Shown here in pieces: positions 132 to 41,807 of a DNA stretch of 64,000 nt. Location: positions 186,001 to 250,000 of the IMG/VR virus record IMGVR_UViG_3300042541_001760; one strand, 5' to 3'. The position numbers were made by a program, and so were the translations under genes. The stretch's first letter is position 1, and each line of letters begins with the position of its first letter. The notes beneath the pieces are model-generated. The model saw only the letters and a list, made by a program, of their open reading frames with translations, was not told where the DNA came from and did not search any database.

Positions 132-1175
132 ATGAATTTAGATAAAATGATTCAGAATTTTAATAATGGTGATGATGAATTCTTGTTGTTATTTGGTACT
201 AAGCATGACGAAATAATACATAGATTCTTATCACTAGTTAAACATAAGGGTAAATTAGACCAAATTTTGTGGAAAGATAATGATAATTTAGAGTATGGGG
301 TTAATAACGTACTACATTTTTTATTTAAAGAACCTGAATATAGAGAGAAGATAATTGATAACGCTATTGATTATTATAGTCGTGATGTGACTAAAGTTGG
401 TGATATAATTTATTTAAATTTTAATGATATTCGTGATTTGTCTGATTTTTTTTGTAATGAAGAATTCAGAAGAGGAGAGATGACTAGTGGTGAAATAGCG
501 AACTCCGTTTTATCTGATGATTTTTGGGAGCCTTATGATGACACGGTTAATGATTTATACGATGATGTCATTGAGGAATTGAGTCCTGAAAATCTTGATA
601 AATTAGGTAATATATTATTAAGACAAATTGGTAATACAAAAATAGAATCTGATGATGACGATTTAATATCAACTATTGCCGATGAACAAGGTCATCCCGA
701 ATATGTTATATTGGAAAAAGATGATATTACCAGAATATTAAAAGACAAATCGGCAACCAAAACGCTTTTTAGAAATGGTTATGTTGAAGGTGATTTAGAA
801 ACCGATTTGTATAATCTTCACGGAAATGCTTATAATGGTGCTTATATTAATGAGTTATATAAAATGGTTTGGAATGCTCTTGGGGACTTATTTGGAAAAG
901 GTGAATATGTTAAAGATGAAAATTCAAGAAGTAAAAACGAATATAGATTTGACATTACAGAATTATTTCCTTTAGTTATTGGTGATTTTATTGAATCTAA
1001 GATGGGTTATAGTGATAATATACAAAATTATTGGAGTTTTAATTCATTAGTAAATGAACTATTTAATTATAGTAGCAAATATGAATGTCTGAAATTAGGT
1101 AGAATACCTGATTACCCTGACCACATTGATGTTAGGAACAACTTAAACTCATCATTTGATGATTACATATACTAA
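132..1175 (+). CDS. Acidic hypothetical protein (347 aa)
   Basis: Long ORF with own putative late promoter; no recognisable family. Confidence 0.8.
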   Translation: MNLDKMIQNFNNGDDEFLLLFGTKHDEIIHRFLSLVKHKGKLDQILWKDNDNLEYGVNNVLHFLFKEPEYREKIIDNAIDYYSRDVTKVGDIIYLNFNDIRDLSDFFCNEEFRRGEMTSGEIANSVLSDDFWEPYDDTVNDLYDDVIEELSPENLDKLGNILLRQIGNTKIESDDDDLISTIADEQGHPEYVILEKDDITRILKDKSATKTLFRNGYVEGDLETDLYNLHGNAYNGAYINELYKMVWNALGDLFGKGEYVKDENSRSKNEYRFDITELFPLVIGDFIESKMGYSDNIQNYWSFNSLVNELFNYSSKYECLKLGRIPDYPDHIDVRNNLNSSFDDYIY

Positions 1176-1447
1176 GGATTAACTTTCCCGCAAATATTAA
1201 TTATTAATGACTCTTCTTCTGATGAAAGTTTATATCTATTATTAATTAAAGACATAACTTTCATATTAAAGTCCTCATCAGATTCTTTTGAAACTACATT
1301 GGATAACTTACTTGTTACGTTTGAGTTTTTTAAACACTCCATAATTACTTTATGATCCATATCATCCATTAATGATTCTAGCATTTCTCTTTTCTCTGAA
1401 CGAGTCATACCGTATAACATTTCGTCAACACTTATATCAATATCCAT
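1172..1447 (-). CDS. Hypothetical protein (91 aa)
   Basis: ORF converging on 132..1175 with 4-nt overlap. Confidence 0.7.
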   Translation of the reverse strand: MDIDISVDEMLYGMTRSEKREMLESLMDDMDHKVIMECLKNSNVTSKLSNVVSKESDEDFNMKVMSLINNRYKLSSEEESLIINICGKVNP

Positions 1448-1545
1448 ATTTTAGTTTTTAGTTAAACATATAAAATTATAGTTTTATTGTCAAATACTAT
1501 TTATCCCTAATTTTATTTTATCTATTAATTATCAAAACAATAGAT

Positions 1546-2346
1546 ATGAAATATATTAATTTAAATTCAAAAAAAGGTTTAGTAAATTTATTCGCCGATT
1601 ACATAGTTAAAGAGTTTAGTCACAATACTATGATACAAGTTTCAGATTGTGGGGCATTCTTCTTAGTCAAAGGTAAAACAGATAAAGAAGAGTATGTTGA
1701 TTTAAACGAAATAAAGAAAACATTCTTAAGTGACAATAAAAACAATTATCAATTTTTAGGTTTAGAGAATATTAATATCATTGATATTATTGAGTATGAT
1801 ACTGAAATCCTACCTAAAGATAGATGGCATTCGTTTTATCCCACTGAGAGACCTATATACACTCAATCTGTTATAGATAGACACGAAGACCTGATTAACA
1901 CAATAAACTCGTTAAATGAGGTTAATGGTAGGTCTGTTATTGAATCTGAGGAGGAGGTTATCGGTTTTGATTATTATGAATACCCATCTATGATTATAAC
2001 ATCAGAATTTCCTTATGGTTATGGTTTGGATACAGGTAGATTGGGTTACTACTATTCTGAATATATTGTCAATCATTTGTTTAACATTACCAACTCATCA
2101 AGTATTGATTTTAGATTCTCAAGTCAGGTTGATGATGATATGGAAGTTAAAATAGACATATCTTTATATGATAGTTTATTACCTAACGAATATATTAAAT
2201 CTATGGTGTTGGATGTATTTAATTTTGATGTGTCCGAACTTAAAAATGAATTACAATCTTATGACTTGTTGGATGACTTAAAGGATCCTTTTGGTAAGAA
2301 GCCTTGGTTGGTTAAGGATATGATTGGGGATATTGTTGTTATTTAA
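1546..2346 (+). CDS. Degenerate S-adenosylmethionine synthetase (MetK)-like protein lacking catalytic motifs
   Basis: Segments FFLVKGKTDKEEYVDLNEI, FPYGYG and VLDVFNFD...PFGKKPWLVKD resemble recalled MetK N-, central and C-terminal motifs; GHPDK and GGGAFSGKD absent. Confidence 0.5.
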   Translation: MKYINLNSKKGLVNLFADYIVKEFSHNTMIQVSDCGAFFLVKGKTDKEEYVDLNEIKKTFLSDNKNNYQFLGLENINIIDIIEYDTEILPKDRWHSFYPTERPIYTQSVIDRHEDLINTINSLNEVNGRSVIESEEEVIGFDYYEYPSMIITSEFPYGYGLDTGRLGYYYSEYIVNHLFNITNSSSIDFRFSSQVDDDMEVKIDISLYDSLLPNEYIKSMVLDVFNFDVSELKNELQSYDLLDDLKDPFGKKPWLVKDMIGDIVVI

Positions 2347-2683
2347 ATTTATGATTCCAACGGTGGATATCGTATTTATAAGTCCATAAAGGTGTTACCT
2401 CCTTTAATTTGTAAACCTCATCCAACCATTTTTTTATAGTTGATTGGATATCTCCGTAGTTAAGATGAAATAATAATTCAATTTTCGACCAAATATCGTC
2501 ATTGTGAATATAAACACGCTCAGTTTTCTTATCGTATTCCATTAAAACCTGATTATTATCATTTACATAATATATTGAGTCAGGATAATCCTTATGTTTC
2601 TTTTGTGTTAAATTACCAAAGTGCTTGTTTAACCACTTGATAACAACCCTCTCTAACTGATGTTCATTTACTTGTATGTTCAT
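2339..2683 (-). CDS. Paralog family protein, copy A (MNIQVN-x-QLERVVIKWLN family)
   Basis: Clear similarity to 2694..3038, 3035..3403 and 6750..7061. Confidence 0.85.
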   Translation of the reverse strand: MNIQVNEHQLERVVIKWLNKHFGNLTQKKHKDYPDSIYYVNDNNQVLMEYDKKTERVYIHNDDIWSKIELLFHLNYGDIQSTIKKWLDEVYKLKEVTPLWTYKYDIHRWNHKFK

Positions 2684-2693
2684 ATTCTATTTT

Positions 2694-3038
2694 TCAATTT
2701 CTAAGTTCTTCCCAATTGAAAATGGATGCGTTACTGTTTCTGATTGGTCTCACACCCTTCAATTTGTAAGTATCTTCCAACCAAACCTCAATAATTGATT
2801 TGATGTCATTGTGTCCAATGTGAAATATATTTTCCAAATGTGACCAAATATCACCATAATGAATATAGACATATTCACTTAGTTTAATGTATTGAAGTAT
2901 AACATTATTACTAGAATCCACATAAAATACCACATTAGGAAAATCCTTATGTTTCTTTGGTGTTAAGTTACCTAAGCGTTTGTTTAACCACTTGATGACA
3001 ACTCTCTCCATTTGATTTCTATTTACCTGTACGTTCAT
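2694..3038 (-). CDS. Paralog family protein, copy B
   Basis: Shares N-terminal MN(V/I)QVN..QxERVVIKWLN and C-terminal WLxxxYKLxxV motifs. Confidence 0.85.
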   Translation of the reverse strand: MNVQVNRNQMERVVIKWLNKRLGNLTPKKHKDFPNVVFYVDSSNNVILQYIKLSEYVYIHYGDIWSHLENIFHIGHNDIKSIIEVWLEDTYKLKGVRPIRNSNASIFNWEELRN

Positions 3039-3403
3039 ATTCTATTTTTTAATTTATAGGTCTCCTCCAACCAAATAAGGCCATCCGGCCAATTGAAATC
3101 ATTATCCATTGGTCTTACTCCCTCCAATTTGTATGTCTCTTTCAACCATACCTTCATAATTGAATGAATTACATGATAGTTAAGGTGAAATAACGATTCA
3201 ACTTTTCCCCAAATATGATTATAATCGATATAAAAATTTTCATACTCCGGATTGTATTCCATCATAACCTTATCATTAGAATTTACGTAAAATACTGAGT
3301 CAGGATAATATTTATGTTTCTTTTGCGTTAAATTACCAAAGTGATTGTTTAACCACTTGATAACAACCCTCTCTAACTGATGTTTATTTACTTGTATGTT
3401 CAT
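3035..3403 (-). CDS. Paralog family protein, copy C
   Basis: Same family; WLxETYKL motif present twice; ATGA-coupled to both neighbours. Confidence 0.85.
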   Translation of the reverse strand: MNIQVNKHQLERVVIKWLNNHFGNLTQKKHKYYPDSVFYVNSNDKVMMEYNPEYENFYIDYNHIWGKVESLFHLNYHVIHSIMKVWLKETYKLEGVRPMDNDFNWPDGLIWLEETYKLKNRI

Positions 3404-3996
3404 TTAATTAATAATATTTTACCATAAATATCTTTATACCCACGATTAAACCCCTTATATACTATATGGTATACGTAAACATCTTCCTGACATATTTGAC
3501 CCTTATAAGTTCCATTCCATTGTTTATTAATATCATCACTTTCAAATATTAATTCACCCCATCTATTAAATATTGTAATATTAAACTTATCAACACCGAA
3601 TCCATAAGCCCCGAAAGTTTCGTTTAGATTGTCATCATTTGGTGTAAATGCGTTTGGGACATAGATGCTTAACTCAGGACACCCCTCAACTTTTACAATC
3701 ACTTCGGTTTGTGAGATACAATTACCATTTGTGTATTGAGCAACTATGGTATACTGACCTGGATCATCCCACCTAACAAATAAAGTATTATCGTTTAATC
3801 CTTGTGCGTTCACACTAGGTTCTACTATCCAACGACTTTGATAACCCGGTAATCCATCAACCCAATATTTTTTATCAATATACAATGTATCACATAAATT
3901 TATTATCTGAGGTTCGTTACGTATCTGTGTGTTTAATGAACCACTTAATAATAAAATAAAGACAATTAATATTGTTTTTAAATATGGGTATGACAT
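3400..3996 (-). CDS. Exported protein with Ig/PKD-like domain and T9SS type-B (gliding motility-associated, CHU_C) C-terminal sorting domain
   Basis: Signal peptide ending LNT|Q; C-terminus IYVPNAFTPNDDNLNETF...IFNRWGELIFES...WNGTYKG...VYVY...GKILLIK. Confidence 0.9.
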   Translation of the reverse strand: MSYPYLKTILIVFILLLSGSLNTQIRNEPQIINLCDTLYIDKKYWVDGLPGYQSRWIVEPSVNAQGLNDNTLFVRWDDPGQYTIVAQYTNGNCISQTEVIVKVEGCPELSIYVPNAFTPNDDNLNETFGAYGFGVDKFNITIFNRWGELIFESDDINKQWNGTYKGQICQEDVYVYHIVYKGFNRGYKDIYGKILLIK

Positions 3997-3997
3997 T

Positions 3998-4564
3998 TTA
4001 ATCTGTGTATATAACCGGTGTTGATGGTGGTGGTGTTATCGTTATTGACCCACTACCACTCATAGGGCATCCATTAGCATCTGTTGATGTGAATGTGATT
4101 GGGTAAACTCCTGTCGCTAATCCTGTTGCGTTAAATACCGATCCGGTAACACCAGTTCCGGCAAATACAGGATTAGTCCCAAGTGGATTGGATGTTAAGT
4201 TTATTGTTCCGTTTCCTTGACATAAGGCATCAACTATAACAACAGGTATTGTTGGTGGTAGTACGGTTATCGTTGCCGAACTAGTTGAACTACATAAACC
4301 AATAGTTTTGGTTATGGTAATTGTGTATGTCCCCGCAACAGACCAAGTGACTTGTATTTGGTCACCACTTGATATTGATGTAAATGGAACTGCTGGTACT
4401 ATACTAAAAGTATATGTCGCCAATGGGTCAATAACTTGGTCACCATAAACTTGAACATCGTTCAAACAATAAGTGTTGTTATTTGCCGAATTCGGTGTTG
4501 GTACTTGTCCGTAACCTAATAGGGTTACCAATAAAAATCCAAGAATAATTATAATCTTTTTCAT
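3998..4564 (-). CDS. Exported two-Ig/PKD-like-domain protein
   Basis: Signal peptide GYG|Q; VTWSVAGTYTIT and GTGVTG..F...G.YPITFT.TDANGC motifs typical of Bacteroidota surface proteins. Confidence 0.8.
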   Translation of the reverse strand: MKKIIIILGFLLVTLLGYGQVPTPNSANNNTYCLNDVQVYGDQVIDPLATYTFSIVPAVPFTSISSGDQIQVTWSVAGTYTITITKTIGLCSSTSSATITVLPPTIPVVIVDALCQGNGTINLTSNPLGTNPVFAGTGVTGSVFNATGLATGVYPITFTSTDANGCPMSGSGSITITPPPSTPVIYTD

Positions 4565-4565
4565 A

Positions 4566-5942
4566 TTAATTTGTGTAAACTGATACTGTTATACCACCCG
4601 GTGGTATGTTTATTGTTTTATTTATTGTTGTTGATGTACAAGGTCCGTTAATGGTTAATGAAACATTATAAGTCCCTGATAATAAATATGCGTGAGTTGG
4701 ATTTTGTTGTATTGAAGTTTGACCATCACCAAAATTCCAAAAATACGTATATAAGTTATTCTGATTAACACAATTGTTAGTTATCGTAGGTGACTGAAAT
4801 GATGCGGTGGTGCAACTTATGGTTGGGTTGGGTAATATGTATTGGGGTTGGACATAAAATGACGCAAAGTTAGGTAATCCGAATCTACCTGCCCTACTCA
4901 CAAGTGGTATGGATAAGTCCGAGTAGTTACACCCGACTCCATAAACATTGGGATTATTTATAACGGATAATGATGTATTATTCCTCGCAACATAAACCTT
5001 ACCATCAGGTCCTAATTGAATTGACCCTATGAAAGCGCCTGCGTTTGATACGACTCTACGGCTAGCCTGTATCTGTGCTTGAGTTCCCGCACATAAATCC
5101 CATTGTAATAACATACCTTGGTTTGTCCCACCATATAATATTCTACCGTCAGGCGAGAATTCACATCCATAGATACCCGTCTCGTTTGATAGGGTAAATC
5201 CCCCTGATGCGAAACCTGTGGATGGGTCAAAATTATGTAACTCAATCTTATTCATTCCATAGTGACACGCCGCCAACCTTCTTCCGTTTGGTGATGCCTT
5301 TAATTGTCCATAAGCGGATTGGGGTACTCCTGATACAACAGACCCGGATATTGACCAAGTAGTAATACTAGGGACACCAACATTATCCACCAACCAAGAG
5401 GTAAATACATTTGTATTCCAATCGTGTGATAAGACCCAAACATCAACATTATTACAATGTCTGACGGCACATAACTTTTCACAGGATGGTGTTTTTAGTT
5501 GGGTATTCTTTGTTGTGACCGCACCTAACCCCACACTTAAACTCATATCAACAATTGAGTAACATATACCATTAACTCCAGCATCGTTATCCGAAGTGAA
5601 GATATAATATATGTTGGGTTGATTTGGTTTCTGAACTATGACGGCTGATTGTGTGGATGAAACATCACCGAATAAACCAGTACCATTTGTCATAACCAAA
5701 TGGTTTTTATTCCAAACGGTAATCCCGTTGGTATAGAATAATAGATTACCCAAATTATCTGATATGGTTGCCACCCCTTCAATAGTGGTTAAGGCTCCAT
5801 TGGTTAAAGCAACAGGAGACCCTGAGTTAAAGGTTATCCCCGCATTTGTCCCAAAATACCAATTAGTACTCGGACCGGGTATTTGTGAATATCCGATAAC
5901 ATAAAGTAATGAAAATAATATTATAAGTTTTAACTTTATCAT
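4566..5942 (-). CDS. Exported beta-propeller plus PKD domain protein
   Basis: Signal peptide GYS|Q; NWYFG...EGVATISD..GNLLFYTNG...NGTGL.G..SSTQSA N-terminus; PKD motif YFWNFGDG...NPTHAY..SGTYNVSLT. Confidence 0.85.
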   Translation of the reverse strand: MIKLKLIILFSLLYVIGYSQIPGPSTNWYFGTNAGITFNSGSPVALTNGALTTIEGVATISDNLGNLLFYTNGITVWNKNHLVMTNGTGLFGDVSSTQSAVIVQKPNQPNIYYIFTSDNDAGVNGICYSIVDMSLSVGLGAVTTKNTQLKTPSCEKLCAVRHCNNVDVWVLSHDWNTNVFTSWLVDNVGVPSITTWSISGSVVSGVPQSAYGQLKASPNGRRLAACHYGMNKIELHNFDPSTGFASGGFTLSNETGIYGCEFSPDGRILYGGTNQGMLLQWDLCAGTQAQIQASRRVVSNAGAFIGSIQLGPDGKVYVARNNTSLSVINNPNVYGVGCNYSDLSIPLVSRAGRFGLPNFASFYVQPQYILPNPTISCTTASFQSPTITNNCVNQNNLYTYFWNFGDGQTSIQQNPTHAYLLSGTYNVSLTINGPCTSTTINKTINIPPGGITVSVYTN

Positions 5943-6607
5943 TCCTTAATACGAATGGTTAGACCAACGTCTAATCCTATCATATAAGTATTAAATGAAT
6001 TGTCAATAACTATTGGTGTTAAATTTGTTCTACCATAAACTGATGTAGTTAGTCCAACACCCTCAATTATATTCATATACAAACCACCTCTAACAAAAAC
6101 CCCTAAATAAGTTTTAACCGTTTTATAATCGTATATTTCAACATCATATGTAAAATCATTACGATTTGTTATTATCCCATCACCAAATATCATATTTAAA
6201 GATGGACCTATTTCAAAATATAAACTTTGACCAATGGATGGGTAGTATGTCAATAAGGGAGATATGGAAACACCATCTATTTGTATTGTCTTATCAATAT
6301 ACTTTAACTCATTAAAATTAACACCATTCGGTATGATTCTAATATCCTGATTTATTCTTGTTTTATTTGTCTCCAATTTAATACCCCAAAATTTATTCTG
6401 ATAATAACCATTCTCAAAATATCTCGCAAACGAAAAACCATATGAACTAGCATAGGTTATTCTTCTTTCATTTCTTAGATCGGTAAATGATGTGTTCGGT
6501 ATGTTTAATGTTGTAATCCCTCGATTAAAATTACCACTAATGGTATAGACTTGGGATAAGAGTGGGGACGACAGTAATACGCATAAAACCAGTAAAAACT
6601 TTTTCAT
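5939..6607 (-). CDS. Outer-membrane beta-barrel protein (PorT-like, about 8 strands)
   Basis: Signal peptide LLS|Q; amphipathic strands, YFEIGPSLNMI motif, terminal strand IGLDVGLTIRI; 222 aa. Confidence 0.65.
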   Translation of the reverse strand: MKKFLLVLCVLLSSPLLSQVYTISGNFNRGITTLNIPNTSFTDLRNERRITYASSYGFSFARYFENGYYQNKFWGIKLETNKTRINQDIRIIPNGVNFNELKYIDKTIQIDGVSISPLLTYYPSIGQSLYFEIGPSLNMIFGDGIITNRNDFTYDVEIYDYKTVKTYLGVFVRGGLYMNIIEGVGLTTSVYGRTNLTPIVIDNSFNTYMIGLDVGLTIRIKE

Positions 6608-6660
6608 AAGATATAGTATATGTTAGTTTAGTTGCCATTCGTAATACGCACTGATTTTAC

Positions 6661-6668
6661 TATAAATA
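6661..6668 (-). promoter_or_regulatory. Putative late promoter TATTTATA driving the 6607-to-2339 operon
   Basis: Exact motif 53 nt upstream of ATG 6607, just downstream of a terminator. Confidence 0.6.
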
Positions 6669-6680
6669 TCTTAAAAACAA

Positions 6681-6705
6681 AAAATCCACTAAAAAAGTGG
6701 ATTTT
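6681..6705 (-). terminator. Intrinsic terminator
   Basis: AAAATCCACT-AAAAA-AGTGGATTTT perfect 10-bp stem with flanking T-run on minus strand. Confidence 0.75.
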
Positions 6706-6749
6706 ATTATTTACTTTATTAAATGTTTTATTACATTAGGTGATTTTTA

Positions 6750-7061
6750 CTAATCATAAGTGGCACCAAAAACTTCTTGAACGTCAATATCGTATGTTTC
6801 GTACATCCATTTTGGGACTATAGTTCTAACATCAACATAAGTTAATTTAAACATATTAACCAAACTCATAAGAATATCATTATTCACATGTAAAATACCA
6901 TTATCAGTATTATAATCCATCATCTGTTTATTATTATGGTTAAAATAAAATACCGTATCGGTAAAATATGAAATCTCTTTTAGTGTTAAGTTACCGTAGT
7001 GTTTATTTAACCACTTGATAACTACTCTTTCCAATTGATGTTTATTTACTTGTATGTCCAT
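6750..7061 (-). CDS. Paralog family protein, copy D
   Basis: MDIQVNKHQLERVVIKWLNKHYGNLT N-terminus. Confidence 0.85.
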   Translation of the reverse strand: MDIQVNKHQLERVVIKWLNKHYGNLTLKEISYFTDTVFYFNHNNKQMMDYNTDNGILHVNNDILMSLVNMFKLTYVDVRTIVPKWMYETYDIDVQEVFGATYD

Positions 7062-7076: not shown

Positions 7077-7361
7077 TTAAAGACCAAAATGTTCCTTAAT
7101 GATATTAACACCCTCATCAATCTCGTTATAATCTCTCTCAGGCGCATATAAGTGAGATACAGGTTCATCATCAGGTGATTCTACAATCATAAAAGACGGA
7201 ACAAAATCATTACCTGTTATCTCCTTGAACATCTCGTATTCGTCCTCGTGTTCGTGGATGTCCCTAACAAAATAGTTAATATTTTCCTCGTTCAACCGGT
7301 CTTTCATCATCTGACAAAATGGACACCCATCCATTGTGAACAGAATTAGTAGTTTATCCAT
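7077..7361 (-). CDS. Glutaredoxin/thioredoxin-fold protein
   Basis: FTMDGCPFC active site and downstream VP motif. Confidence 0.85.
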   Translation of the reverse strand: MDKLLILFTMDGCPFCQMMKDRLNEENINYFVRDIHEHEDEYEMFKEITGNDFVPSFMIVESPDDEPVSHLYAPERDYNEIDEGVNIIKEHFGL

Positions 7362-7668
7362 TTATAATTTTACTTGATAAGTCGATTATTTCTTTTATCT
7401 GCATAATTCCAACCTTATTAAAAACTTCTTCACCGCTTTTAAATCCTTTTATAGTGGGAACTCCTCTAACACCTAACTGCATAGTTAATTCTGAATCGGA
7501 ATCCACATTATATTTATACACACTTAAATTTGTAATTTGTGATGAAGCACTCTCCAACATTGGCATCATAACTTTACACGGACCACACCACGGGGCATAG
7601 CAATCCAATATGAAATCTTCCCCCTTTTTAATCTTTTCTCTTACTTGTTCTGCGTTTAATTCAATCAT
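7354..7668 (-). CDS. trxA: Thioredoxin
   Basis: APWCGPCK active site, GVRGVPT motif, 104 aa. Confidence 0.95.
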   Translation of the reverse strand: MIELNAEQVREKIKKGEDFILDCYAPWCGPCKVMMPMLESASSQITNLSVYKYNVDSDSELTMQLGVRGVPTIKGFKSGEEVFNKVGIMQIKEIIDLSSKIING

Positions 7669-10095: not shown

Positions 10096-11466
10096 TTAAT
10101 TATCAAGAAAAAAGTAACCATTACCTTGTGATATTAAATTTTCCCTAACCGATTCAGGTAAGGTTTCCTCTAACTTATCTCCTGAACCATAAATGTTAAG
10201 GAAGGTCAGGTCTTTTAAGTTTTCTATTGAACTTGGTAATGATTTTAATTGTTTGTTATTAGGTAGTATAAGATAACCTAAATTTGTTAGTTTTCCAAGT
10301 TCATCAGGTAATGATTTAACAATATTTTCTAATTGTAAAGTCGTTAAATTTGTAAATTCGCCTATTGATGCTGGAATGTCTATCGCAAGATCTTCTTTAG
10401 ATTTATTAATGAATGATAACATATCTATGTCTCTTGGTAAACTTTCAAACAATTCCTCAAAGCCATATAGAGCCACGAATTTACCCGCTGAACTATCAGG
10501 GTAAGTTATGTTAACTTGGTTCGTAGATTGATTAACCAATCCTTTTGCGAATTCAGGTTTGAAGTATTCTTTAAGGTCGGGTGCTTTATTATTTAAAAAA
10601 TCAACCAACTCAATTCTATGGTCTAATCTATCCATAAACTGATTAGATGGGAAGTGAAATTGGAATCTGTCTTGGGGTAATCCTGTTCTTCCTCCGACAG
10701 GTCCACCCTCATCGTTAGATAATAACACATAAAGAGGTCCGTCTTTAACATATCCCCTAAAATAACTTGAACTTGGTGGTGATGTACACCATCTTGATTC
10801 ACCCTTTTCGTAGTCATAATAACCACCATACCAAGATGCCGCTTCTTGACCTTTTTCACCCCCATCTGAAATCTTAACCACTGTATAGTTGTCTCCAACA
10901 TATTCAACGGTCGCACCAGGATGTGAAAAACCTTTTCTTTCTTTACGAATTTCTTTTTTAACTTCTGACTTAGCTAATTTATTCTTAATCTTCTCAGGTA
11001 GTTCAAAATTATTTAGGAATTTGAAAAGTTTAGTTGGTGTAAATTTATTGATATCTCTCCATACAACAGGAAAATATTGTTTGTATTTTGTGAATTTTTT
11101 AAGGTCATCTGTTAATTTAAACAAATCCTCCATAAATAAATCACGTGCTCTTTCAACACTACCTGAGTCGTCAGTTTCGGGACTCTCATAGTTCTTTAAC
11201 ATCCAATTAACATATTGACCCGGTTGAATCTTTTTTAAATTCTCAGGACTAAAATCCGCATCGTTAAAATCCGCAGGTTTTTTTGTGGTTGGATCGGCAA
11301 ATATGATATCTGCCAATTTATTTATATCCATTAAAGCTTTTGAGCCTTTACCGGGTATTACATCTTTCTTAGGTTTTGTATATTTGTCAATCAATACATC
11401 AAAACGACTTTGTTCCGTTAGAATATTACGTAACAATGTGTTTAATTTTATATTTTTAATTTTCAT
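10096..11466 (-). CDS. Protein with central WCTS domain and C-terminal leucine-rich repeats
   Basis: SRWCTS motif; IPASIGEFTNLTTLQL, LPDELGKLTNLGYLIL, LPSSIENLKDLTFLNI repeats. Confidence 0.85.
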   Translation of the reverse strand: MKIKNIKLNTLLRNILTEQSRFDVLIDKYTKPKKDVIPGKGSKALMDINKLADIIFADPTTKKPADFNDADFSPENLKKIQPGQYVNWMLKNYESPETDDSGSVERARDLFMEDLFKLTDDLKKFTKYKQYFPVVWRDINKFTPTKLFKFLNNFELPEKIKNKLAKSEVKKEIRKERKGFSHPGATVEYVGDNYTVVKISDGGEKGQEAASWYGGYYDYEKGESRWCTSPPSSSYFRGYVKDGPLYVLLSNDEGGPVGGRTGLPQDRFQFHFPSNQFMDRLDHRIELVDFLNNKAPDLKEYFKPEFAKGLVNQSTNQVNITYPDSSAGKFVALYGFEELFESLPRDIDMLSFINKSKEDLAIDIPASIGEFTNLTTLQLENIVKSLPDELGKLTNLGYLILPNNKQLKSLPSSIENLKDLTFLNIYGSGDKLEETLPESVRENLISQGNGYFFLDN

Positions 11467-11496
11467 ATCTATTATATATTTTGCTAAGTTATTAAA

Positions 11497-13311
11497 TTAA
11501 TACCAAATATAAAAACCGGGACCTTCTTCTTTCATCCTTGCTCTTACTTCTTCGGGTATGATTATATCAGGATTAGATCCCTCCAATAGGATGAAATCTA
11601 ACTCTTCTAATTTTGCTAATGATTTGGGTAATGACTTTAGTCTAGGGTTGTTGGGTAATCCTAAAACAGATAACCTACTTAGATTACCAATTGATTCGGG
11701 TAACTCCTCAACAACGCCAGTCAAACTTAAATTCTCAAGATTACTAAATCTATCTATGTCGTTTGGTATATCTATTTTTATTGACCCATCTTTACTCTTA
11801 TTCTTTATTACTAACTCAGTGATGGTGTCAGGTAATGAATCAAAAAGTTCTTTTAATCCATATAGGGCAATGTATTTACCTTCGTTTGATGATGGTAACT
11901 CAATTACTGCTGAGTCCTTGAATACAAAATTGGTTGCGAACTTAGTTTTAAGGGATTCTTTTAGTTTGGCCATCATAGGTAAATTTAGTATGGCTATCTC
12001 ACCTTCACTTAAACTACCAATATTCTTGTTAGATAAAGCCTCAACTTTTTTCTTTAGGTAGTATTTCATTGTGTCAGAATCAGAGTTCCTAACTTGACCT
12101 GCGGTTAATTCGTGACCTAAAGCAATATATTTCTTTCTTAAATTTGGTGTTAGGCTATTGAATTGTTCATCACTTACTTTCCTATTAACAATCTCTAACC
12201 AATACTCAACCTCATTTTCATTAGCGAAAGTATCAAAGAGATTATCACCGACTTTTGAGTTTCTTATTTTATCTATAAGTACTTTTTCGTCAGATGTTAA
12301 TGGTTTTGGTTTGAATACGCCCTCCAATCCTTTTAATTTAGGTATTTTAGTTAATATCTCACTCCAAGGAATATTGTTATGACCTGAATATCTACCTGAG
12401 TTTGTACCATCCGCCAATGACATATCCCCATCAGGGTCAACCAATATAACAACCGCAAAGTTTACATCAGAATAATCCTTATCTTGGTCTATCACATAGT
12501 ATAATGTTCTCTCGTTGTCTAATCTATAGTTATAGAATAAGTTTGATGTTCCCTCACGAGATGTACACCAACTTCTACCATTCTTTAACTTAATACACTG
12601 GTCTCTCGTCTTTGGTTGGAATATTAATAAGTTATTCTCATTGTATACTTCCTCAATATCAGATACATCTGTTTTTGTTTCTGTGTCGTCGGATTTAACT
12701 GACGCATCAATATAATGTTCAAAATCTGTAAAACTTAGTGAGGTTGCCAATGGCATTTGCTCATATAACTGATTAAAGTTATCCAAGTACGCTTGAACAT
12801 AATACATTATTACATCTTCCGTTAGATTTGGATTCTCTTTCTTAAATTTCTCTGACAATATTTTTAGTAGAAACTTGGGGTAAGATTGGTCAATAACTTT
12901 TTGTAAATCCAAGAATTTATACTTGGTGATGTCCTTACCTTTACCGAATGCGTCCTCAATCTCCAAAAACTTTCTAATGGTTTTCTTAAGAGACACATTT
13001 TCAATACCCCCTTCTTTCTTTTTGAACTCCTTAAAAAGATCGGATTCTCTTTTTTGAGTTCTCTTTAAAGCAATAATGTTTTTTAATTCACTATATGAAT
13101 ATCTTGATAAATCTCTTTTCTCAACAGGTAACCCGTTTTTGTATTTTTCAAAATCGTCAATGTATCCACCTATGGTTTTTTCGTCATCCTTAGTATCTTG
13201 TAAAAATTTACCGATTAACTTCGCTTTTATTTTATCGGATACTTCTTTAAGTAACTTTTTAGGTAACGGGCTTTCAACCACAACGGACGATAATAAATTT
13301 ACTAACTTCAT
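11497..13311 (-). CDS. Paralogous WCTS-domain plus leucine-rich-repeat protein
   Basis: RSWCTS motif; LPESIGNLSRLSVLGL, LPKSLAKLEELDFILL repeats; C-terminal region aligns with 10096..11466. Confidence 0.85.
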   Translation of the reverse strand: MKLVNLLSSVVVESPLPKKLLKEVSDKIKAKLIGKFLQDTKDDEKTIGGYIDDFEKYKNGLPVEKRDLSRYSYSELKNIIALKRTQKRESDLFKEFKKKEGGIENVSLKKTIRKFLEIEDAFGKGKDITKYKFLDLQKVIDQSYPKFLLKILSEKFKKENPNLTEDVIMYYVQAYLDNFNQLYEQMPLATSLSFTDFEHYIDASVKSDDTETKTDVSDIEEVYNENNLLIFQPKTRDQCIKLKNGRSWCTSREGTSNLFYNYRLDNERTLYYVIDQDKDYSDVNFAVVILVDPDGDMSLADGTNSGRYSGHNNIPWSEILTKIPKLKGLEGVFKPKPLTSDEKVLIDKIRNSKVGDNLFDTFANENEVEYWLEIVNRKVSDEQFNSLTPNLRKKYIALGHELTAGQVRNSDSDTMKYYLKKKVEALSNKNIGSLSEGEIAILNLPMMAKLKESLKTKFATNFVFKDSAVIELPSSNEGKYIALYGLKELFDSLPDTITELVIKNKSKDGSIKIDIPNDIDRFSNLENLSLTGVVEELPESIGNLSRLSVLGLPNNPRLKSLPKSLAKLEELDFILLEGSNPDIIIPEEVRARMKEEGPGFYIWY

Positions 13312-13356: not shown

Positions 13357-14202
13357 TTAATAGTTCATAATCAAAAGTTCTTCCCCCATAGATTGTTTAC
13401 CACCTTTTTTTGCTCCTGCCGCTTTTGCGAACTCTTTACTCTCCCATCTATACTTATCTTTTGGAAACCATTCCTCCAATTTATCAAAATAATAGTATGA
13501 CATTGAGAACTTACCTTTCATATTTCTTAGGGTGTCTGCCAGTCTTTCGTGGTCACTTAATCCGAATCCGTGATTGGAATAATAGTCCTCCGTCTTGTAG
13601 TATGGAGCGTCAACATACACATAAAAATTCTCATCGTCATATTTCTCAATGAACTTTTGAAAATCCATATTCTCAACGATATTGATGCTCTTAAATTTCT
13701 TAATCCACTCAGGATGTTTTAATTTATCTCTGAATGTTAGAAACTTAGATTTATACTTACCCTTCAAATCAATGTAGTTACTTTTCTCAGGTTTACTACC
13801 TGAAAATACTTGTGTTAAGATGTAAGCGTATTGAGCGGCAACCTCATAATTAGGTTCATCACCAACCACAAAATTGGGATCGTATAACTTTGTTTGGAAC
13901 TCTTTGAATAGTTTTGGTAACTCAGGTGATGTATTGGGGTCGTCTTTCTGTTGGCAAGGTATGTTCTCAACCTCAACCAACAATAGTTCGGGGTTCTTTA
14001 AACACTTAAAAAAATTAGTGTTAAGTGGATTAAAGTCATTATATATGACGTTGGTAAGATTTGGGAAGTTCACCATATCCATATTAAAGAAACACCAAAA
14101 CATTCCACCGAAGCATTCTGAGTAATTAGTTATGTTTGAAGGGTAGTGTGGGGTAATCCATTTTGAGATTCGGGACTTACCTCCGATGTATGAAACTGGC
14201 AT
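13357..14202 (-). CDS. dam: Dam-family (D12 class) N6-adenine DNA methyltransferase
   Basis: YIGGKS, ECFGG, IYNDFN, ENMDF, YVDAPY (DPPY variant), DHERLA motifs. Confidence 0.85.
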   Translation of the reverse strand: MPVSYIGGKSRISKWITPHYPSNITNYSECFGGMFWCFFNMDMVNFPNLTNVIYNDFNPLNTNFFKCLKNPELLLVEVENIPCQQKDDPNTSPELPKLFKEFQTKLYDPNFVVGDEPNYEVAAQYAYILTQVFSGSKPEKSNYIDLKGKYKSKFLTFRDKLKHPEWIKKFKSINIVENMDFQKFIEKYDDENFYVYVDAPYYKTEDYYSNHGFGLSDHERLADTLRNMKGKFSMSYYYFDKLEEWFPKDKYRWESKEFAKAAGAKKGGKQSMGEELLIMNY

Positions 14203-14476: not shown

Positions 14477-14686
14477 ATGTTTGTTAAAAATAAAAATATT
14501 ATGGAAAATATCGTAGAAACACTATTCGCAAAAGACAACTCAAAACCTGAAGGTGAGTGTAAAACATGTAAAAATAAAGTCAACCCGTTACAAAGTGGTT
14601 TAATTTGGTTCTCAGTTTGGATGTTAATAATGTCATTATATGGTCACGTAGTTTTTTTTAAAAAAATATTTGGTCTTATTTTTTAA
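14477..14686 (+). CDS. Small membrane protein with CxxC motif (start may be 14501)
   Basis: CKTCK followed by one hydrophobic helix. Confidence 0.6.
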   Translation: MFVKNKNIMENIVETLFAKDNSKPEGECKTCKNKVNPLQSGLIWFSVWMLIMSLYGHVVFFKKIFGLIF

Positions 14687-15620
14687 ATCTGACATTCAAT
14701 CTGACATACATATCCCCTAACCCGTTGTTCCTGAACCCCTTTGATTTTAATCTTAGGGGTTTTGTTGTATCAAACTCATCTGGCATCTTAATAGCCAACT
14801 TACCATCAGGGTGTGGTATCTCAAAACTATCCGACTTTAACTCATCAAGATTAAAAAACTTATTGTATATGAGATCGTTATTAACCTTCTCAAAATCTTC
14901 CAATGGTTGGACATTAAATTTTATGAGTAAGTTACCATAACTACCATTTATAAAATCCCCTTTACCTTGAGCCTTAATGAATTGTCCATTATCAATTCCG
15001 TGAGGTATGGCAATATTAATTGAGTCCATCATATCTTTTGTTCCTGAACCAACACAAGAGTGGCAGGTGGTCTTAAATGTAAATCCTCTACCACCACATC
15101 CATTACAAGCGGTTCTAACCATCTGAACAAACATACCGGTACCTACTCTTTGTGTTATTGATCCGGCGCCACCGCACATTCCACATTGTATCCTTTCTCC
15201 ACCACTACCACTACAATCCTGACATTGGTGTTTTCTATTATATACTATATTTTTTTGAGCTGACTTATATGAATCCAATACACTTATATTAACATCAACC
15301 ACTTTATCAGGGGCTTGTCTTTGTTGTTGTTGGGGATTACCTCCACGACCACCACCGAAGAACTGAGCAAACAAATCTTCCATAGATCCACCTCCACCAC
15401 CAAATCCTGCCATTGGGTTGTTTCTTTGGTTATCGTATCGTTTTCGTTTATTATCGTCTCCAATCGTATCATAAGCCTGAGCAACCTCCTTGAATATATT
15501 CTCATCCCCTCCTTTATCGGGGTGATGCTCAACCGCTTTCTTCCTATACGCTTTTTTTATTTCATCTTGGGTTGCGGTTTCGGAAACTCCTAACACTTCA
15601 TAATAATTGGGTTGTGCCAT
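14676..15620 (-). CDS. dnaJ: DnaJ chaperone
   Basis: J-domain with HPD, G/F-rich linker, four CxxCxGxG repeats, DnaJ C-terminal domain. Confidence 0.95.
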   Translation of the reverse strand: MAQPNYYEVLGVSETATQDEIKKAYRKKAVEHHPDKGGDENIFKEVAQAYDTIGDDNKRKRYDNQRNNPMAGFGGGGGSMEDLFAQFFGGGRGGNPQQQQRQAPDKVVDVNISVLDSYKSAQKNIVYNRKHQCQDCSGSGGERIQCGMCGGAGSITQRVGTGMFVQMVRTACNGCGGRGFTFKTTCHSCVGSGTKDMMDSINIAIPHGIDNGQFIKAQGKGDFINGSYGNLLIKFNVQPLEDFEKVNNDLIYNKFFNLDELKSDSFEIPHPDGKLAIKMPDEFDTTKPLRLKSKGFRNNGLGDMYVRLNVRFKK

Positions 15621-25777: not shown

Positions 25778-26395
25778 ATGAAAAACATATTATTTTTAGA
25801 TGAACAAATTAAAAGAATCTACGAAGTGTCATATACTATTTCGGAATCAAGAGGTAAGAATAGACAGAACATTATTAATGATGTGGTAATAGAATCCTTA
25901 AAATCCGATATATACTATAATGATTGTGTGTTTAAAAAAGAAGTTATAATCCCCGGAACAAAATTACTATGGGGTAAATACTTTCCTGTTGATATATGCG
26001 TATATAAAGATAATACTCTAATTGAGATTATTTTAAATAAGGCGCCTTCATCAAATATAAAGCAAAATAGAATTAATTCACTTAATGGTATTAATTCAGA
26101 CATAACAAGATTATCTAAATTAGAAAATATAAAAATTTCTTTAATTAATTTTTTACCTAAGATATCCCCTTTCTTTAAAAGAGATGAAAGTATTAAATCT
26201 TTTGAGAAAAATGAGCCTTTTTTCTTATCTACTTCTGGCGCCTTTTATAAATTCGATGTTGATGAAATATATGTTACTTTTGAAATTAATAATTTATATA
26301 AATGTAATTCAAAAGTTGATGTTAGAAATTTATTTTTGGTGAATCCTATAAAAAATGTGAATTTAATTCAAAAAAATTATAAAAGTTTAACTTAA
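25778..26395 (+). CDS. Putative type II restriction endonuclease
   Basis: Adjacent to and convergent with an MTase; PVD...E...K.P.SN.KQN..N segment; shares the very AT-rich composition of the MTase. Confidence 0.45.
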   Translation: MKNILFLDEQIKRIYEVSYTISESRGKNRQNIINDVVIESLKSDIYYNDCVFKKEVIIPGTKLLWGKYFPVDICVYKDNTLIEIILNKAPSSNIKQNRINSLNGINSDITRLSKLENIKISLINFLPKISPFFKRDESIKSFEKNEPFFLSTSGAFYKFDVDEIYVTFEINNLYKCNSKVDVRNLFLVNPIKNVNLIQKNYKSLT

Positions 26396-27840
26396 TAAGT
26401 ATAACTCTTTATAGTTGTGGTGGATACACTCAACCAAACATCATCAGATTTACTTTTATCTGATAAAATTTTATTATTTAACTCACAAAAACTATGGAAA
26501 TTACCACTTGAGATTATTTTAACGAACTCTTCTTTCATTCCTTTTTTAATATCGATTAACAATCCAGACATAACTAGACAATTTTCTTTTTCGGGTATTT
26601 CAATATAATGTATGTTTCTTGATCTTAGGAATGTTAATGGTAGTATTATGTAATCACCTTTTTTTTCTTTTAGTAATCCTTGCCTTCTACCGTAAGCATA
26701 CCAAGTATCATAATTTGACGTTTTTCCTTTATCTCTTGATAATAAATCATTTTTTCTACTTAAAAGATAATCATAACAAAATGGATAATCTCGTTTAAGG
26801 TTATTTTCATTTATTATTTCACCATTTACGTAAGGATATATGATGTATTTATACTCGCTAAAATTTCTACTTGTGGTTGCTTTTATATATTTTTTACAAA
26901 TGTTTTTTTCTATTTTAAAACCATTCTTATAACAAAAATCCTCGTCATTATAATCCATTTTAAAAACATCGTCCTTTATTGTTGCCAATCCACCAGAATA
27001 ATAATTAACCATATCACTTAGTTTATTGTTACCGTATTTTATTTCCTCAAATATCCATTTGTTAAGAGATAAATCTTTTTTGTTTTTAATAATATTTAAT
27101 TTATTTGTTTCATATAAAACAACATCAGAAATATTTTCTTCACATATAACTATTGATGTGTAGGTTGATATATTATCCCATACTTTTTCATTCTTAAAAT
27201 CATAAATATATGATACTCGTTCTTTTATTATTTCTCTTATAAAAGACCCTGATTTATTTTTTATAAAAGAATTTGGTATAATAAAACCTACTTTTTTTGA
27301 ATGTATTAATGATTTTTCCAAAAAAGCATAATATAAATCAATATTACCTAATGAAATTGATTTTAACTCTCCTTTTAACGAATTTAAATAATCTTTGTTT
27401 ATATTTTGAATTCGGACATATGGTGGATTTCCAAGTATAACATCATAATCCATTTTCTGTATTAGAAAATCACCTTGTATAATATTATTAAATGATAATT
27501 CACCATCATGTTTAAAATATTCAAAATACCCATTTAATAGTAATTTAAATTCATTAAGAAAATCTTTATTTATATCATAACAGAATAAATTATTATTTAC
27601 AAAATTGGCAATTTCCTTTATAGAATAATCTTTTTGTCTGAAAAACTCTAATAGTGAAAAAACGAAAACTCCTTTACCGACACTTGGCTCACAGATAATT
27701 TCATTTATTTTTGGATTAATTCTATTAATAATAATATCACATATGGTTTTGTCTGTGAAAACAACACCATTTTCTTTAATGGATTTTTTATCTTTCTGAT
27801 TAAAGTAACTTGAATTACTTATTATTTTGTCTAAATTCAT
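26392..27840 (-). CDS. Eco57I/TaqI-like N6-adenine DNA methyltransferase
   Basis: GVVFT, EPSVGKGVF (motif I), GNPPYVR (motif IV), DLYYAFLE, GFIIPNS. Confidence 0.9.
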   Translation of the reverse strand: MNLDKIISNSSYFNQKDKKSIKENGVVFTDKTICDIIINRINPKINEIICEPSVGKGVFVFSLLEFFRQKDYSIKEIANFVNNNLFCYDINKDFLNEFKLLLNGYFEYFKHDGELSFNNIIQGDFLIQKMDYDVILGNPPYVRIQNINKDYLNSLKGELKSISLGNIDLYYAFLEKSLIHSKKVGFIIPNSFIKNKSGSFIREIIKERVSYIYDFKNEKVWDNISTYTSIVICEENISDVVLYETNKLNIIKNKKDLSLNKWIFEEIKYGNNKLSDMVNYYSGGLATIKDDVFKMDYNDEDFCYKNGFKIEKNICKKYIKATTSRNFSEYKYIIYPYVNGEIINENNLKRDYPFCYDYLLSRKNDLLSRDKGKTSNYDTWYAYGRRQGLLKEKKGDYIILPLTFLRSRNIHYIEIPEKENCLVMSGLLIDIKKGMKEEFVKIISSGNFHSFCELNNKILSDKSKSDDVWLSVSTTTIKSYTY

Positions 27841-41753: not shown

Positions 41754-41799
41754 TTAATAATAATTCTTACAAACTAAATAATAATTGGTTATTTTTAGT

Positions 41800-41807
41800 T
41801 ATAAATA
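41800..41807 (-). promoter_or_regulatory. Putative late promoter TATTTATA
   Basis: Exact motif upstream of ATG 41753. Confidence 0.55.

What the first reader, a model, noticed from the sequence alone, without database searches (positions are those of the whole stretch)
1546..2346. Degenerate, internally shortened MetK (SAM synthetase)-like protein
Seen: three collinear segments resemble E. coli-type MetK as I recall it. These are FFLVKGKTDKEEYVDLNEI (vs VLVAGEITTSAYVDIPKI), SEFPYGYG (vs QGLMFGYA) and VLDVFNFD...PFGKKPWLVKD (vs VREFFDLR...HFGREHFPWEKTD). The protein is only 266 aa, and the catalytic GHPDK and GGGAFSGKD motifs are absent. Inference: it may be a pseudoenzyme that binds SAM or poisons host MetK oligomers, lowering SAM for SAM-dependent defences (type I R-M, BREX), or it may have been repurposed otherwise. 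The window also has two SAM-dependent MTases.
Basis: inference. Interest (0 to 1): 0.7.

Follow-up and report, generated by a model that had tools for sequence, protein, structure and literature searches.

The report
Shrunken inactive SAM-synthetase copy in phage
A giant lake-water phage of Bacteroidota carries a conserved, probably transcribed copy of the enzyme that makes the methyl donor SAM; it is one third shorter and has lost the catalytic residues, so it almost certainly cannot make SAM, and what it does is unknown.

Summary
ORF 1546-2346 (+), 266 aa, has no Pfam, PHROG or NCBIfam hit. A profile of its homologues hits only methionine adenosyltransferase (MAT/MetK) in the PDB (E 6e-4). 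A confident AlphaFold model (pLDDT 95) matches only MATs: Z 15.6, 259 of 266 residues aligned, next fold Z 5.6.

It is a miniaturised MetK. All three domains are represented, but about 118 residues are missing, including the gating loop and the P-loop. In every alignment tried, the catalytic His/Asp/Lys and the SAM/ATP-contacting residues are replaced or deleted.

It is not decaying:
- dN/dS is 0.145.
- All 80 IMG/VR loci examined (of 385 with a relative) carry intact ORFs.
- It keeps a fixed position next to glutaredoxin and thioredoxin.
- Contigs from two lake metatranscriptomes cover it.
- No copy was found in cellular genomes.

So it is a new, phage-restricted family of MetK-derived pseudoenzymes in a clade of freshwater Bacteroidota jumbo phages.

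The function is unresolved. I infer a non-catalytic binding role at the remodelled former active-site face. Canonical SAM binding is disfavoured, because the contact residues are gone. The test for binding to host MetK gave no answer.

The parts
1546..2346 (+). Gene for the 266-aa miniaturised, catalytically dead MetK-fold protein (stop codon 2344-2346). It is single copy in the 261-kb phage record.
   Evidence: ORF. MetK fold. Single copy. dN/dS 0.145. RNA-library contigs over 1639-2205.
1567..1614 (+). Residues 8-23: remnant of the GHPDK motif plus the first helix. The GHPDK counterpart is G11-L-V-N14-L (hhalign) or S8-K-K-G11 (HMMER). His, Asp and Lys are lost in either register. N14 is 95% conserved in the family.
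   Evidence: Helix 9-22 in the model.
1627..1680 (+). Residues 28-45: beta-hairpin of the central domain. G43 (100% conserved) aligns with G54 of GGEITT. Met-binding Glu55 is Lys44, a variable position.
1819..1845 (+). Residues 92-100 (DRWHSFYPT): the true counterpart of MetK GDQGLMFGYA. Asp118 is lost, and the preceding gating loop is about 15 residues shorter.
1864..2001 (+). Residues 107-152: reduced N-terminal-type domain. It has a short helix 107-115 and strands 120-126, 129-134 and 143-145. This is the least conserved part of the family and the part most prone to insertions and deletions. The 241-243-aa short forms lack about 30 residues here.
2002..2040 (+). Residues 153-165, SEFPYGYGLDTGR: the most conserved block of the family (S153 98%, P156 99%, G158 99%, R165 88%). 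It probably corresponds to the MetK substrate loop GGPMGDxGLTGR (same P-x-G...G-R spacing). The following strand and the P-loop GGGAFSGKD are then deleted. This assignment is of low confidence.
2041..2343 (+). Residues 166-266: C-terminal MetK domain. Helix 165-182 aligns with RSAAYAARYVAKNIV, LDVFNFD with REFFDLR (D223 99% conserved), and KPWLVKD with FPWEKTD.
   Evidence: 6 of 83 members hit PF02773.
1448..1545 (.). 98-bp AT-rich intergenic region, shared with the divergent 91-aa gene (1172-1447, -). It presumably holds the promoter. No promoter motif stands above chance.
7077..7668 (-). Glutaredoxin (7077-7361) and thioredoxin (7354-7668). In the clade these are the conserved convergent neighbours of the MetK-like gene. 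Here a 4.7-kb insertion separates them from it.
   Evidence: Grx lies downstream on the opposite strand in 67 of 77 IMG/VR loci.
13357..14202 (-). Dam-like (D12 class) N6-adenine DNA methyltransferase. It uses SAM and is syntenic in relatives.
26392..27840 (-). Eco57I / N6_Mtase-type DNA methyltransferase. It uses SAM.

Best explanation
The gene encodes a miniaturised, catalytically dead descendant of bacterial-type S-adenosylmethionine synthetase (MetK/MAT).

Shown:
- It has the MAT fold over its whole length, with all three domains represented.
- About 118 residues are missing. The alignments place the losses mainly at the gating loop, the second helix of the N-terminal domain, and the last strand of the central domain plus the P-loop.
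- The catalytic and substrate-contact residues are gone in every alignment tried.
- The gene is under purifying selection, is intact in all 80 IMG/VR loci examined, and is covered by contigs from RNA libraries.
- It sits at a fixed position in a clade of freshwater jumbo phages whose cargo genes point to Bacteroidota hosts.

Inferred:
- Like every MAT, it probably pairs through the flat face formed by its three beta-sheets.
- Its best conserved residues are N14, D18, G43, D80, Y84, S153, F155, P156, G158, Y159, S160, R165, S219 and D223. By homology, several of them (the helix after the GHPDK position, the strand leading to Gln98, and probably the substrate loop) fall in segments that line the former active-site cleft on that face.
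- It therefore most likely acts by binding, not catalysis. The partner would be a protein (itself, or host MetK) or a small ligand, in a remodelled cleft.
- The phage needs SAM for at least four DNA methyltransferases, so I expect the protein to serve or tune methyl-donor supply rather than to destroy it.

My odds:
- MetK-derived and unable to make SAM: about 0.9.
- Works by binding at the ex-active-site/dimer face: about 0.55.
- Its role concerns SAM or MetK at all: about 0.35.
For: Fold:
- pLDDT 95; Foldseek E 2.7e-9, MATs only; Z 15.6 with 259 residues aligned; next fold Z 5.6.
- The first, weaker model gave the same answer.

Sequence homology:
-.

Loss of catalytic residues:
-, read against the EcMAT residue list in PMC3853416.
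- No Pfam or NCBIfam MetK hit for this protein.

Selection and conservation:
- dN/dS 0.145.
- More than 360 homologues of 229-277 aa; 190 clusters at 50% identity.
- 385 IMG/VR contigs encode a relative; all 80 examined have intact ORFs.
- Conservation peaks at residues 151-160 and 221-230.

Synteny:
-.

Expression:
- Contigs from two independent lake metatranscriptomes cover 1639-2205 and 1861-2184 at 98-99% identity.

SAM dependence of the phage:
-; it has no MetK of its own.

Host phylum:
-.
Against: - There is no direct evidence for any binding partner or ligand. The only complex prediction was uninformative.
- The oligomeric state is untested.
- Only one residue (G43) is invariant. Many of the other conserved positions are hydrophobic and may be structural only.
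- Residue-level alignment with MetK has low confidence in the N-terminal helix (two registers) and in the SEFP block.
- Placing the conserved residues at the former cleft rests on homology, not on coordinates I could inspect.
- RNA-library contigs carry no strand information, and DNA carry-over cannot be excluded.
- The neighbours are convergent, not co-transcribed, so the synteny says nothing about function.
Confidence: 0.55

Rival explanations
1. Poison subunit. The protein pairs with host MetK monomers through the MAT dimer face. Each MAT active site is built from both subunits, so the mixed dimer is dead. SAM falls, and SAM-dependent defences (type I/III R-M, BREX) fail.
For: It keeps the MAT fold, with all three sheets that form the dimer face. 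MAT active sites lie at the monomer interface (PMC3853416). There is a precedent for phage inhibition of MetK: T3 SAMase forms heteropolymers with MetK, and this helps evade BREX (PMC8406200 and bioRxiv 10.1101/2023.02.27.530186; titles and abstracts seen).
Against: The phage encodes at least four SAM-dependent DNA methyltransferases, two of them syntenic with this gene, so starving SAM would hurt the phage itself. The protein is only 9-13% identical to MATs, although the MAT interface is highly conserved. It is a syntenic core gene, not a patchy anti-defence island gene. The complex test gave no answer.
Confidence: 0.15
2. New enzyme on an old scaffold. The remodelled cleft, with its conserved Ser/Asp/Tyr/Arg residues, catalyses a different reaction on a nucleoside, amino-acid or SAM-related substrate.
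For: Conserved polar residues fall in segments homologous to the former active-site region: S153, Y159, S160, R165, D80, Y84, N14, D18, D223. The protein lies in a region rich in nucleotide and redox genes: Grx, Trx, and NUDIX in relatives.
Against: Only G43 is invariant. No metal- or phosphate-binding motif remains, and the P-loop is deleted. No similarity to any other enzyme fold was found.
Confidence: 0.12
3. Ligand sponge. The protein sequesters a small SAM-derived or nucleotide immune signal or metabolite in the remodelled cleft.
For: It descends from a SAM/ATP-binding fold. The conserved loop lies at the former substrate site. The protein is acidic and soluble-looking (pI 4.4). From memory, not checked here: Bacteroides type III CRISPR systems signal with SAM-AMP, and phage sponges for immune signals are a known strategy.
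Against: All canonical adenosine and methionine contacts are lost. Known sponges are usually small and patchily distributed, whereas this is a 266-aa core gene. No binding data exist.
Confidence: 0.07
4. It is still a (minimal) SAM synthetase that uses migrated residues.
For: A different 260-aa phage mini-MetK does exist and keeps all the motifs, so shortening alone does not preclude activity.
Against: Here His14, Asp16, Lys17, Asp118, Asp238, Lys245 and the whole P-loop with Lys265/Lys269/Asp271 are replaced or deleted. There is no TIGR01034 or Pfam hit.
Confidence: 0.02
5. Chance or compositional resemblance: an AT-rich ORF that merely looks like the MetK of an AT-rich organism.
For: The single sequence has no significant hit. 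The best sequence hit is to the AT-rich Ureaplasma. hhalign E-values are weak (0.01-0.14).
Against: The structure match is specific and full-length, with a large gap to the next fold. The sequence matches are collinear in several segments. Pfam PF02773 hits several members independently.
Confidence: 0.02

Closest known systems
Bacterial/eukaryotic S-adenosylmethionine synthetase (MetK/MAT; e.g. E. coli 1XRA/8BB1_A, C. jejuni 4LE5, U. urealyticum 6RJS)
   Same: Same fold and topology over the whole chain (Z 15.6, 259 of 266 residues aligned). Collinear sequence remnants: GxxxxxAD helix, G of GGEITT, FGY strand, helix RSAAYAARY, FFDLR, FPWExxD.
   Different: It is 118 residues shorter than E. 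coli MetK. The gating loop, an N-domain helix, a central-domain strand and the P-loop are missing. The catalytic and substrate-contact residues are replaced. It is only 9-13% identical to MATs, falls below all Pfam and NCBIfam thresholds, and was found only in phages.
Full-length phage/prophage MetK (Streptococcus 'Javan' prophages, Staphylococcus phage UPMK_1, Helicobacter prophages)
   Same: A phage-borne member of the MAT superfamily.
   Different: Those are 45-63% identical to E. coli MetK, cover 95-98% of it and are annotated as SAM synthetases. They are presumably active auxiliary metabolic genes. The present family is dead and miniaturised.
260-aa mini-MetK of Anaeroplasmataceae phage NatCom_34063 (Heliusvirales; XTK84654.1)
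   Same: A phage protein of about 260 aa derived from MetK by internal shortening.
   Different: It keeps HPDK, GDxG, the GG..D.G.T.RK loop and the GGG..GKD P-loop, and it hits TIGR01034 at E 5e-14. It shows no detectable similarity to the present family. This is an independent event, and that protein is probably still an enzyme.
T3 SAM lyase (SAMase)
   Same: A phage protein that interferes with host SAM supply, partly by binding MetK. It is the functional model behind the poison-subunit hypothesis.
   Different: The fold is unrelated: in 8BB1 the model matches the MetK chain, not the lyase. T3 carries no DNA methyltransferases (from memory), whereas this phage carries at least four.
Trypanosomatid AdoMetDC prozyme (a dead paralogue that regulates a SAM-pathway enzyme)
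   Same: A catalytically dead paralogue of a SAM-pathway enzyme that has been kept for a regulatory, heterodimer-forming role (PMC6221367, abstract seen).
   Different: It belongs to a different enzyme family and is eukaryotic. It activates its partner. A MAT heterodimer with a dead partner would be expected to lose both composite active sites.

Membership tests
MetK/MAT (EC 2.5.1.6; Pfam PF00438/PF02772/PF02773; TIGR01034) | Scores above the curated Pfam/NCBIfam thresholds | tested here: not met
   No MetK family hit at E <= 1 for the window protein. Only 6 of 83 relatives reach PF02773, and weakly (best E 4e-5).
MetK/MAT (EC 2.5.1.6; Pfam PF00438/PF02772/PF02773; TIGR01034) | Three-domain MAT fold | tested here: met
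   Model pLDDT 95. Z 15.6/15.4/11.2 to bacterial and archaeal MATs with 232-259 residues aligned; next fold Z 5.6. The N-terminal-type domain is reduced to one helix and three short strands.
MetK/MAT (EC 2.5.1.6; Pfam PF00438/PF02772/PF02773; TIGR01034) | GHPDK motif (catalytic His14, Mg-binding Asp16, Lys17) | tested here: not met
   The counterpart is G-L-V-N-L or S-K-K-G.
MetK/MAT (EC 2.5.1.6; Pfam PF00438/PF02772/PF02773; TIGR01034) | P-loop GGGAFSGKD with Lys265, Lys269 and Asp271 | tested here: not met
   In the full-length alignment, MetK 241-268 falls in a gap and Asp271 aligns with Gly164.
MetK/MAT (EC 2.5.1.6; Pfam PF00438/PF02772/PF02773; TIGR01034) | Substrate contacts Glu55, Gln98, Asp118, Asp163, Arg229, Phe230, Asp238 (list from PMC3853416) | tested here: not met
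   Their counterparts are Lys44 (variable), Asp85 (variable), a gap, no conserved acid, Ile150, Ile151 and Tyr159. Per-residue confidence is low, but no alternative register restores them.
MetK/MAT (EC 2.5.1.6; Pfam PF00438/PF02772/PF02773; TIGR01034) | Obligate dimer with composite active sites | tested here: inconclusive
   Only a heteromer job with F. johnsoniae MetK could be run. It gave 'no answer' because the partner was unfolded, pLDDT 31-35. No homodimer job was available.
MetK/MAT (EC 2.5.1.6; Pfam PF00438/PF02772/PF02773; TIGR01034) | SAM synthesis activity | not testable with these tools
   Needs a biochemical assay.
T3-type SAM lyase / MetK-binding anti-restriction protein | SAM lyase fold | tested here: not met
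   Fold searches return MAT chains only. In the T3 complex 8BB1, chain A (MetK) is the match.
Phage anti-defence sponge proteins | High-affinity binding of an immune signalling molecule | not testable with these tools
   No fold or sequence similarity to any known sponge appeared in the searches. Binding cannot be computed here.

The most novel reading that the evidence does not exclude
The dead mini-MetK is a counter-defence or host-takeover factor that exploits its ancestry. Either it inserts into host MetK oligomers to re-programme methyl-donor supply, or its remodelled cleft captures a SAM-derived immune signal such as the SAM-AMP of Bacteroidota type III CRISPR systems. Either would be the first case of a phage turning a housekeeping SAM synthetase into a non-catalytic weapon.
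Probability: 0.12. Interest if true: 0.85.

Novelty: new variant of a known kind. Interest (0 to 1): 0.5.

Why it matters
MetK is one of the most conserved enzymes of life, and I found no description of a catalytically dead derivative of it. This one defines an unannotated family:
- Every named homologue is a 'hypothetical protein', and no Pfam or PHROG family covers it.
- At least 385 IMG/VR contigs encode a relative, and the family falls into about 190 clusters at 50% identity.
- It is restricted to an uncultured clade of jumbo phages. The window's phage recurs in lake-water metagenomes from 2017 to 2025.

It gives a clean example of how phages miniaturise and repurpose a core metabolic enzyme. 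Because SAM sits at the centre of restriction-modification, BREX and some CRISPR signalling, it is also a concrete candidate for a new way of manipulating methyl-donor biology. At the least, the family can now be annotated ('MetK-like pseudoenzyme') instead of being left blank.

Tried and rejected
1. Single-sequence searches (Pfam, PHROGs, PDB phmmer, NCBIfam, tblastn against 50,697 phage records, ESM Atlas by features) gave nothing useful. Only family profiles and structure revealed the homology.

2. hhalign against one MetK sequence or a 6-sequence MetK profile was weak: E 0.14, 0.0095 and 0.087, covering the C-terminal segment only. A greedy alignment gave a collinear full-length map, but with low per-residue confidence. 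A sub-alignment of residues 100-182 could not place the SEFP block.

3. Complex prediction:
I did not resend those rows.
   - A different job, the window protein plus the Swiss-Prot reference METK_FLAJ1, ran and returned 'no answer' (score 0.00; partner pLDDT 31-35).
   - This is evidence neither for nor against binding.

4. A scan of 185,579 species genomes for the family found no relative. The scan is pattern-based, so absence is not proven.

5. The upstream 347-aa gene is not a constant partner. It is present in only 5 of 80 loci and is unrelated to the 459-aa gene that occupies that side in other relatives.

6. The sigma-70 promoter and terminator scan was not above chance.

7. I rejected the idea that one whole domain is lost, which the first, shallow model suggested (pLDDT < 50 for residues 126-152). 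The deeper model shows a small but ordered N-type domain.

8. The genome search 'relatives' is not available for virus records, and the ENA contig locus L002 is not held.

Full report
CONTEXT

The window is bases 186001-250000 of a 261-kb IMG/VR virus record that CheckV estimates at 89% complete. It is AT-rich, about 28-36% GC. It encodes a baseplate J-like protein, the large subunit of class I ribonucleotide reductase, DnaJ, thioredoxin, glutaredoxin, two LRR proteins and two DNA methyltransferases. The baseplate protein is only 24-27% identical to those of a 484-kb uncultured phage, Flavobacterium 'immuto' phages and a Microcystis phage.

A cargo cassette carrying a T9SS CHU_C sorting domain has 33-53% identical relatives almost exclusively in Bacteroidota genomes such as Lacinutrix, Lutibacter and Flavobacterium. 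The likely host is therefore a freshwater member of Bacteroidota (inference). Near-identical sequence occurs in at least 22 lake and freshwater metagenome runs from 2017-2025.

THE OBSERVATION

ORF 1546-2346 (+) encodes 266 aa. The single sequence hits nothing in Pfam, PHROGs, NCBIfam or the PDB. It does have a large family:
- More than 360 homologues of 229-277 aa, all unnamed or 'hypothetical protein'.
- 190 clusters at 50% identity in an exhaustive search, none the length of a normal MetK.
- 385 IMG/VR contigs encoding a relative.
- No relative in a scan of one genome per prokaryotic species.

A profile of 36 members hits only methionine adenosyltransferase in the PDB (U. urealyticum 6RJS/6RK5, E 6e-4), in two collinear stretches. 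An 83-member profile again hits only MATs. Six members individually reach Pfam S-AdoMet_synt_C.

FOLD

A first AlphaFold model from 36 sequences (pLDDT 76) already matched only MATs in the PDB, AFDB-SwissProt, AFDB clusters and the ESM Atlas. With 83 sequences the model reaches pLDDT 95 and pTM 0.91.
- Foldseek then gives E 2.7e-9 and TM about 0.6 by query, and the listed hits are all MATs.
- An aligner that does not depend on Foldseek gives Z 15.6 and 15.4 to bacterial MATs and 11.2 to an archaeal MAT.
- 259 of the 266 residues are aligned across the whole enzyme.
- The best unrelated fold reaches Z 5.6, and only over one 84-residue alpha/beta unit.

Homology to bacterial-type MetK is therefore established as far as computation can.

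ANATOMY

I combined the HMMER alignments, hhalign and the secondary structure of the model. Numbers are for mature E. coli MetK, and the residue roles come from PMC3853416.
- Strand 3-4 and helix 9-22 correspond to the N-terminal strand and the helix after GHPDK. The motif itself reads G-L-V-N-L or S-K-K-G, depending on the register.
- Hairpin 28-45 is the GGEITT hairpin. G43 is the only invariant residue of the family, and Glu55 is replaced by Lys44.
- Strand 77-83 leads to the position of Gln98, which is a variable Asp85. The gating loop is about 15 residues shorter.
- DRWHSFY (92-98) is the GDQGLMFGY strand, without Asp118.
- Residues 107-152 form a reduced N-type domain: a short helix and three short strands, with no second helix. 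This part is the least conserved and the most variable in length. The short forms of 241-243 aa lack about 30 residues here.
- SEFPYGYGLDTGR (153-165) is the best conserved block. It most plausibly corresponds to the substrate loop GGPMGDxGLTGR, with Asp238 replaced by Tyr159. The next 28 residues of MetK, including the P-loop GGGAFSGKD, are then absent, so the block runs straight into the helix that aligns with RSAAYAARYVAKNIV.
- The C-terminal domain follows, with LDVFNFD aligned to REFFDLR and KPWLVKD to FPWEKTD.

The registers of the first helix and of the SEFP block are uncertain. In none of the alignments tried are the catalytic or substrate-contact residues kept.

Segment 2 (SEFPYGYG against QGLMFGYA) is wrong.

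IS IT ALIVE?

Yes.
- Against an 83%-identical homologue, dN/dS is 0.145 (dS 0.58).
- All 80 IMG/VR loci examined have intact ORFs of 243-295 aa.
- The gene is single copy in the phage.
- Assembled contigs from two independent lake metatranscriptome libraries cover the gene body at 98-99% identity: 1639-2205 in one and 1861-2184 in the other. It is the only stretch of the first 6 kb covered in both. This suggests transcription in nature. The caveats are that strand is unknown and DNA carry-over is possible.

CONTEXT IN RELATIVES

Even members only 27-31% identical sit in the same place. The gene lies on one strand, converging on a glutaredoxin-thioredoxin pair on the other strand. Further on come a protein of about 560 aa, an LRR protein, a Dam-like methyltransferase and DnaJ.

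A glutaredoxin lies within 3 kb downstream on the opposite strand in 67 of 77 loci, and immediately adjacent in 32. In this window a 4.7-kb insertion separates them. It holds four small paralogous genes and the CHU_C cassette.

The gene is thus a vertically inherited core gene of one jumbo-phage clade, with contigs of up to about 320-500 kb. It is not a sporadic accessory gene.

MECHANISM

Shown: the protein cannot be a SAM synthetase of the known kind. Every residue known to hold adenosine, methionine, the triphosphate or the metals is missing.

Inferred: the three beta-sheets that form the flat dimer face of MATs are all present. The family's conserved positions are N14/D18 in the first helix, D80/Y84 in the strand leading to Gln98, the SEFPxGYS..GR loop, and S219/D223. 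By homology, several of these fall in segments that line the inter-subunit active-site cleft. I therefore think the protein is a dimer-forming binding module with a remodelled cleft.

What it binds is open. Two readings are disfavoured:
- Lowering SAM. The phage carries two PF01555 methyltransferases just upstream of the window, plus the Dam-like and Eco57I-like enzymes inside it, and has no MetK of its own. Starving SAM would hurt the phage itself.
- Canonical SAM binding. The contact residues are gone.

A heteromer with host MetK remains possible and would be expected to kill both composite active sites.

COMPARISON AND NOVELTY

- Full-length MetK genes, presumably active, are common in Streptococcus and other prophages.
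- A Heliusvirales phage has an independently shortened 260-aa MetK that keeps all the motifs.
- T3 SAM lyase binds and inhibits MetK but has another fold.
- Dead paralogues that regulate a SAM-pathway enzyme are known from trypanosome AdoMetDC prozyme.

Three literature searches found no description of a catalytically dead MetK derivative, in phages or elsewhere. I rate this as a new variant of a known kind: a known fold, but a new, phage-restricted pseudoenzyme family of unknown function.

VERDICT

- The pseudoenzyme reading is supported.
- The specific SAM-binding and SAM-lowering readings are not.
- Interest is moderate (0.5). The homology is solid and the family is large and unannotated, but the function is still a matter of inference.

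Noticed in passing
window 2339-7061 (-): Four paralogous small genes (2339-2683, 2694-3038, 3035-3403, 6750-7061; 103-122 aa, all starting MNIQVN/MDIQVN..ERVVIKWLNK) flank a four-gene cassette at 3400-6607. The cassette has a CHU_C T9SS sorting domain and higher GC (38% against about 30%). Its 458-aa member has relatives almost only in Bacteroidota genomes. This looks like host-derived secreted or surface cargo inserted between the MetK-like gene and glutaredoxin. It is present in only 2 of 80 related loci, and in L036.
   Followed up: partly
L004:3995-4777 (Anaeroplasmataceae phage NatCom_34063, PV036447.1): A 260-aa 'hypothetical protein' is an independently shortened MetK that keeps the HPDK, GDxG, GG..D.G.T.RK and GGG..GKD motifs (26% identical to E. 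coli MetK; TIGR01034 E 5e-14). It may be a natural minimal SAM synthetase.
   Followed up: partly
G000:C1:180788-181513 and 155768-156127; window 13357-14202 and 26392-27840: The phage encodes at least four DNA methyltransferases (two PF01555, one Dam-like, one Eco57I-like). It has no MetK of its own and no radical SAM enzyme.
   Followed up: yes
window 10096-13311 (-): Two tandem genes (456 and 604 aa) have C-terminal leucine-rich repeats. One LRR gene is syntenic in relatives. Their function is unknown.
   Followed up: no
window 14676-15620 (-): A full-length DnaJ (J domain, zinc-finger domain and C-terminal domain) is encoded by the phage and is syntenic across the clade.
   Followed up: no
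window 40140-45061 (-) and 52789-58992 (-): Two large proteins have SprB repeats, which are typical of Bacteroidota gliding adhesins. A 2067-aa ORF without any Pfam check lies next to the baseplate genes and may be a tail fibre or host-recognition protein.
   Followed up: no
window 1000-4000: 22 lake-water and freshwater DNA runs from 2017-2025 hold 56-96% of the sampled 31-letter words of this stretch (near-identical sequence). The phage lineage is widespread and persistent in lakes.
   Followed up: partly
window 883-1078: One DNA contig of run X1 skips 194 bases inside the upstream 347-aa gene (joint 883 to 1078). This may be a deletion variant in the population.
   Followed up: no
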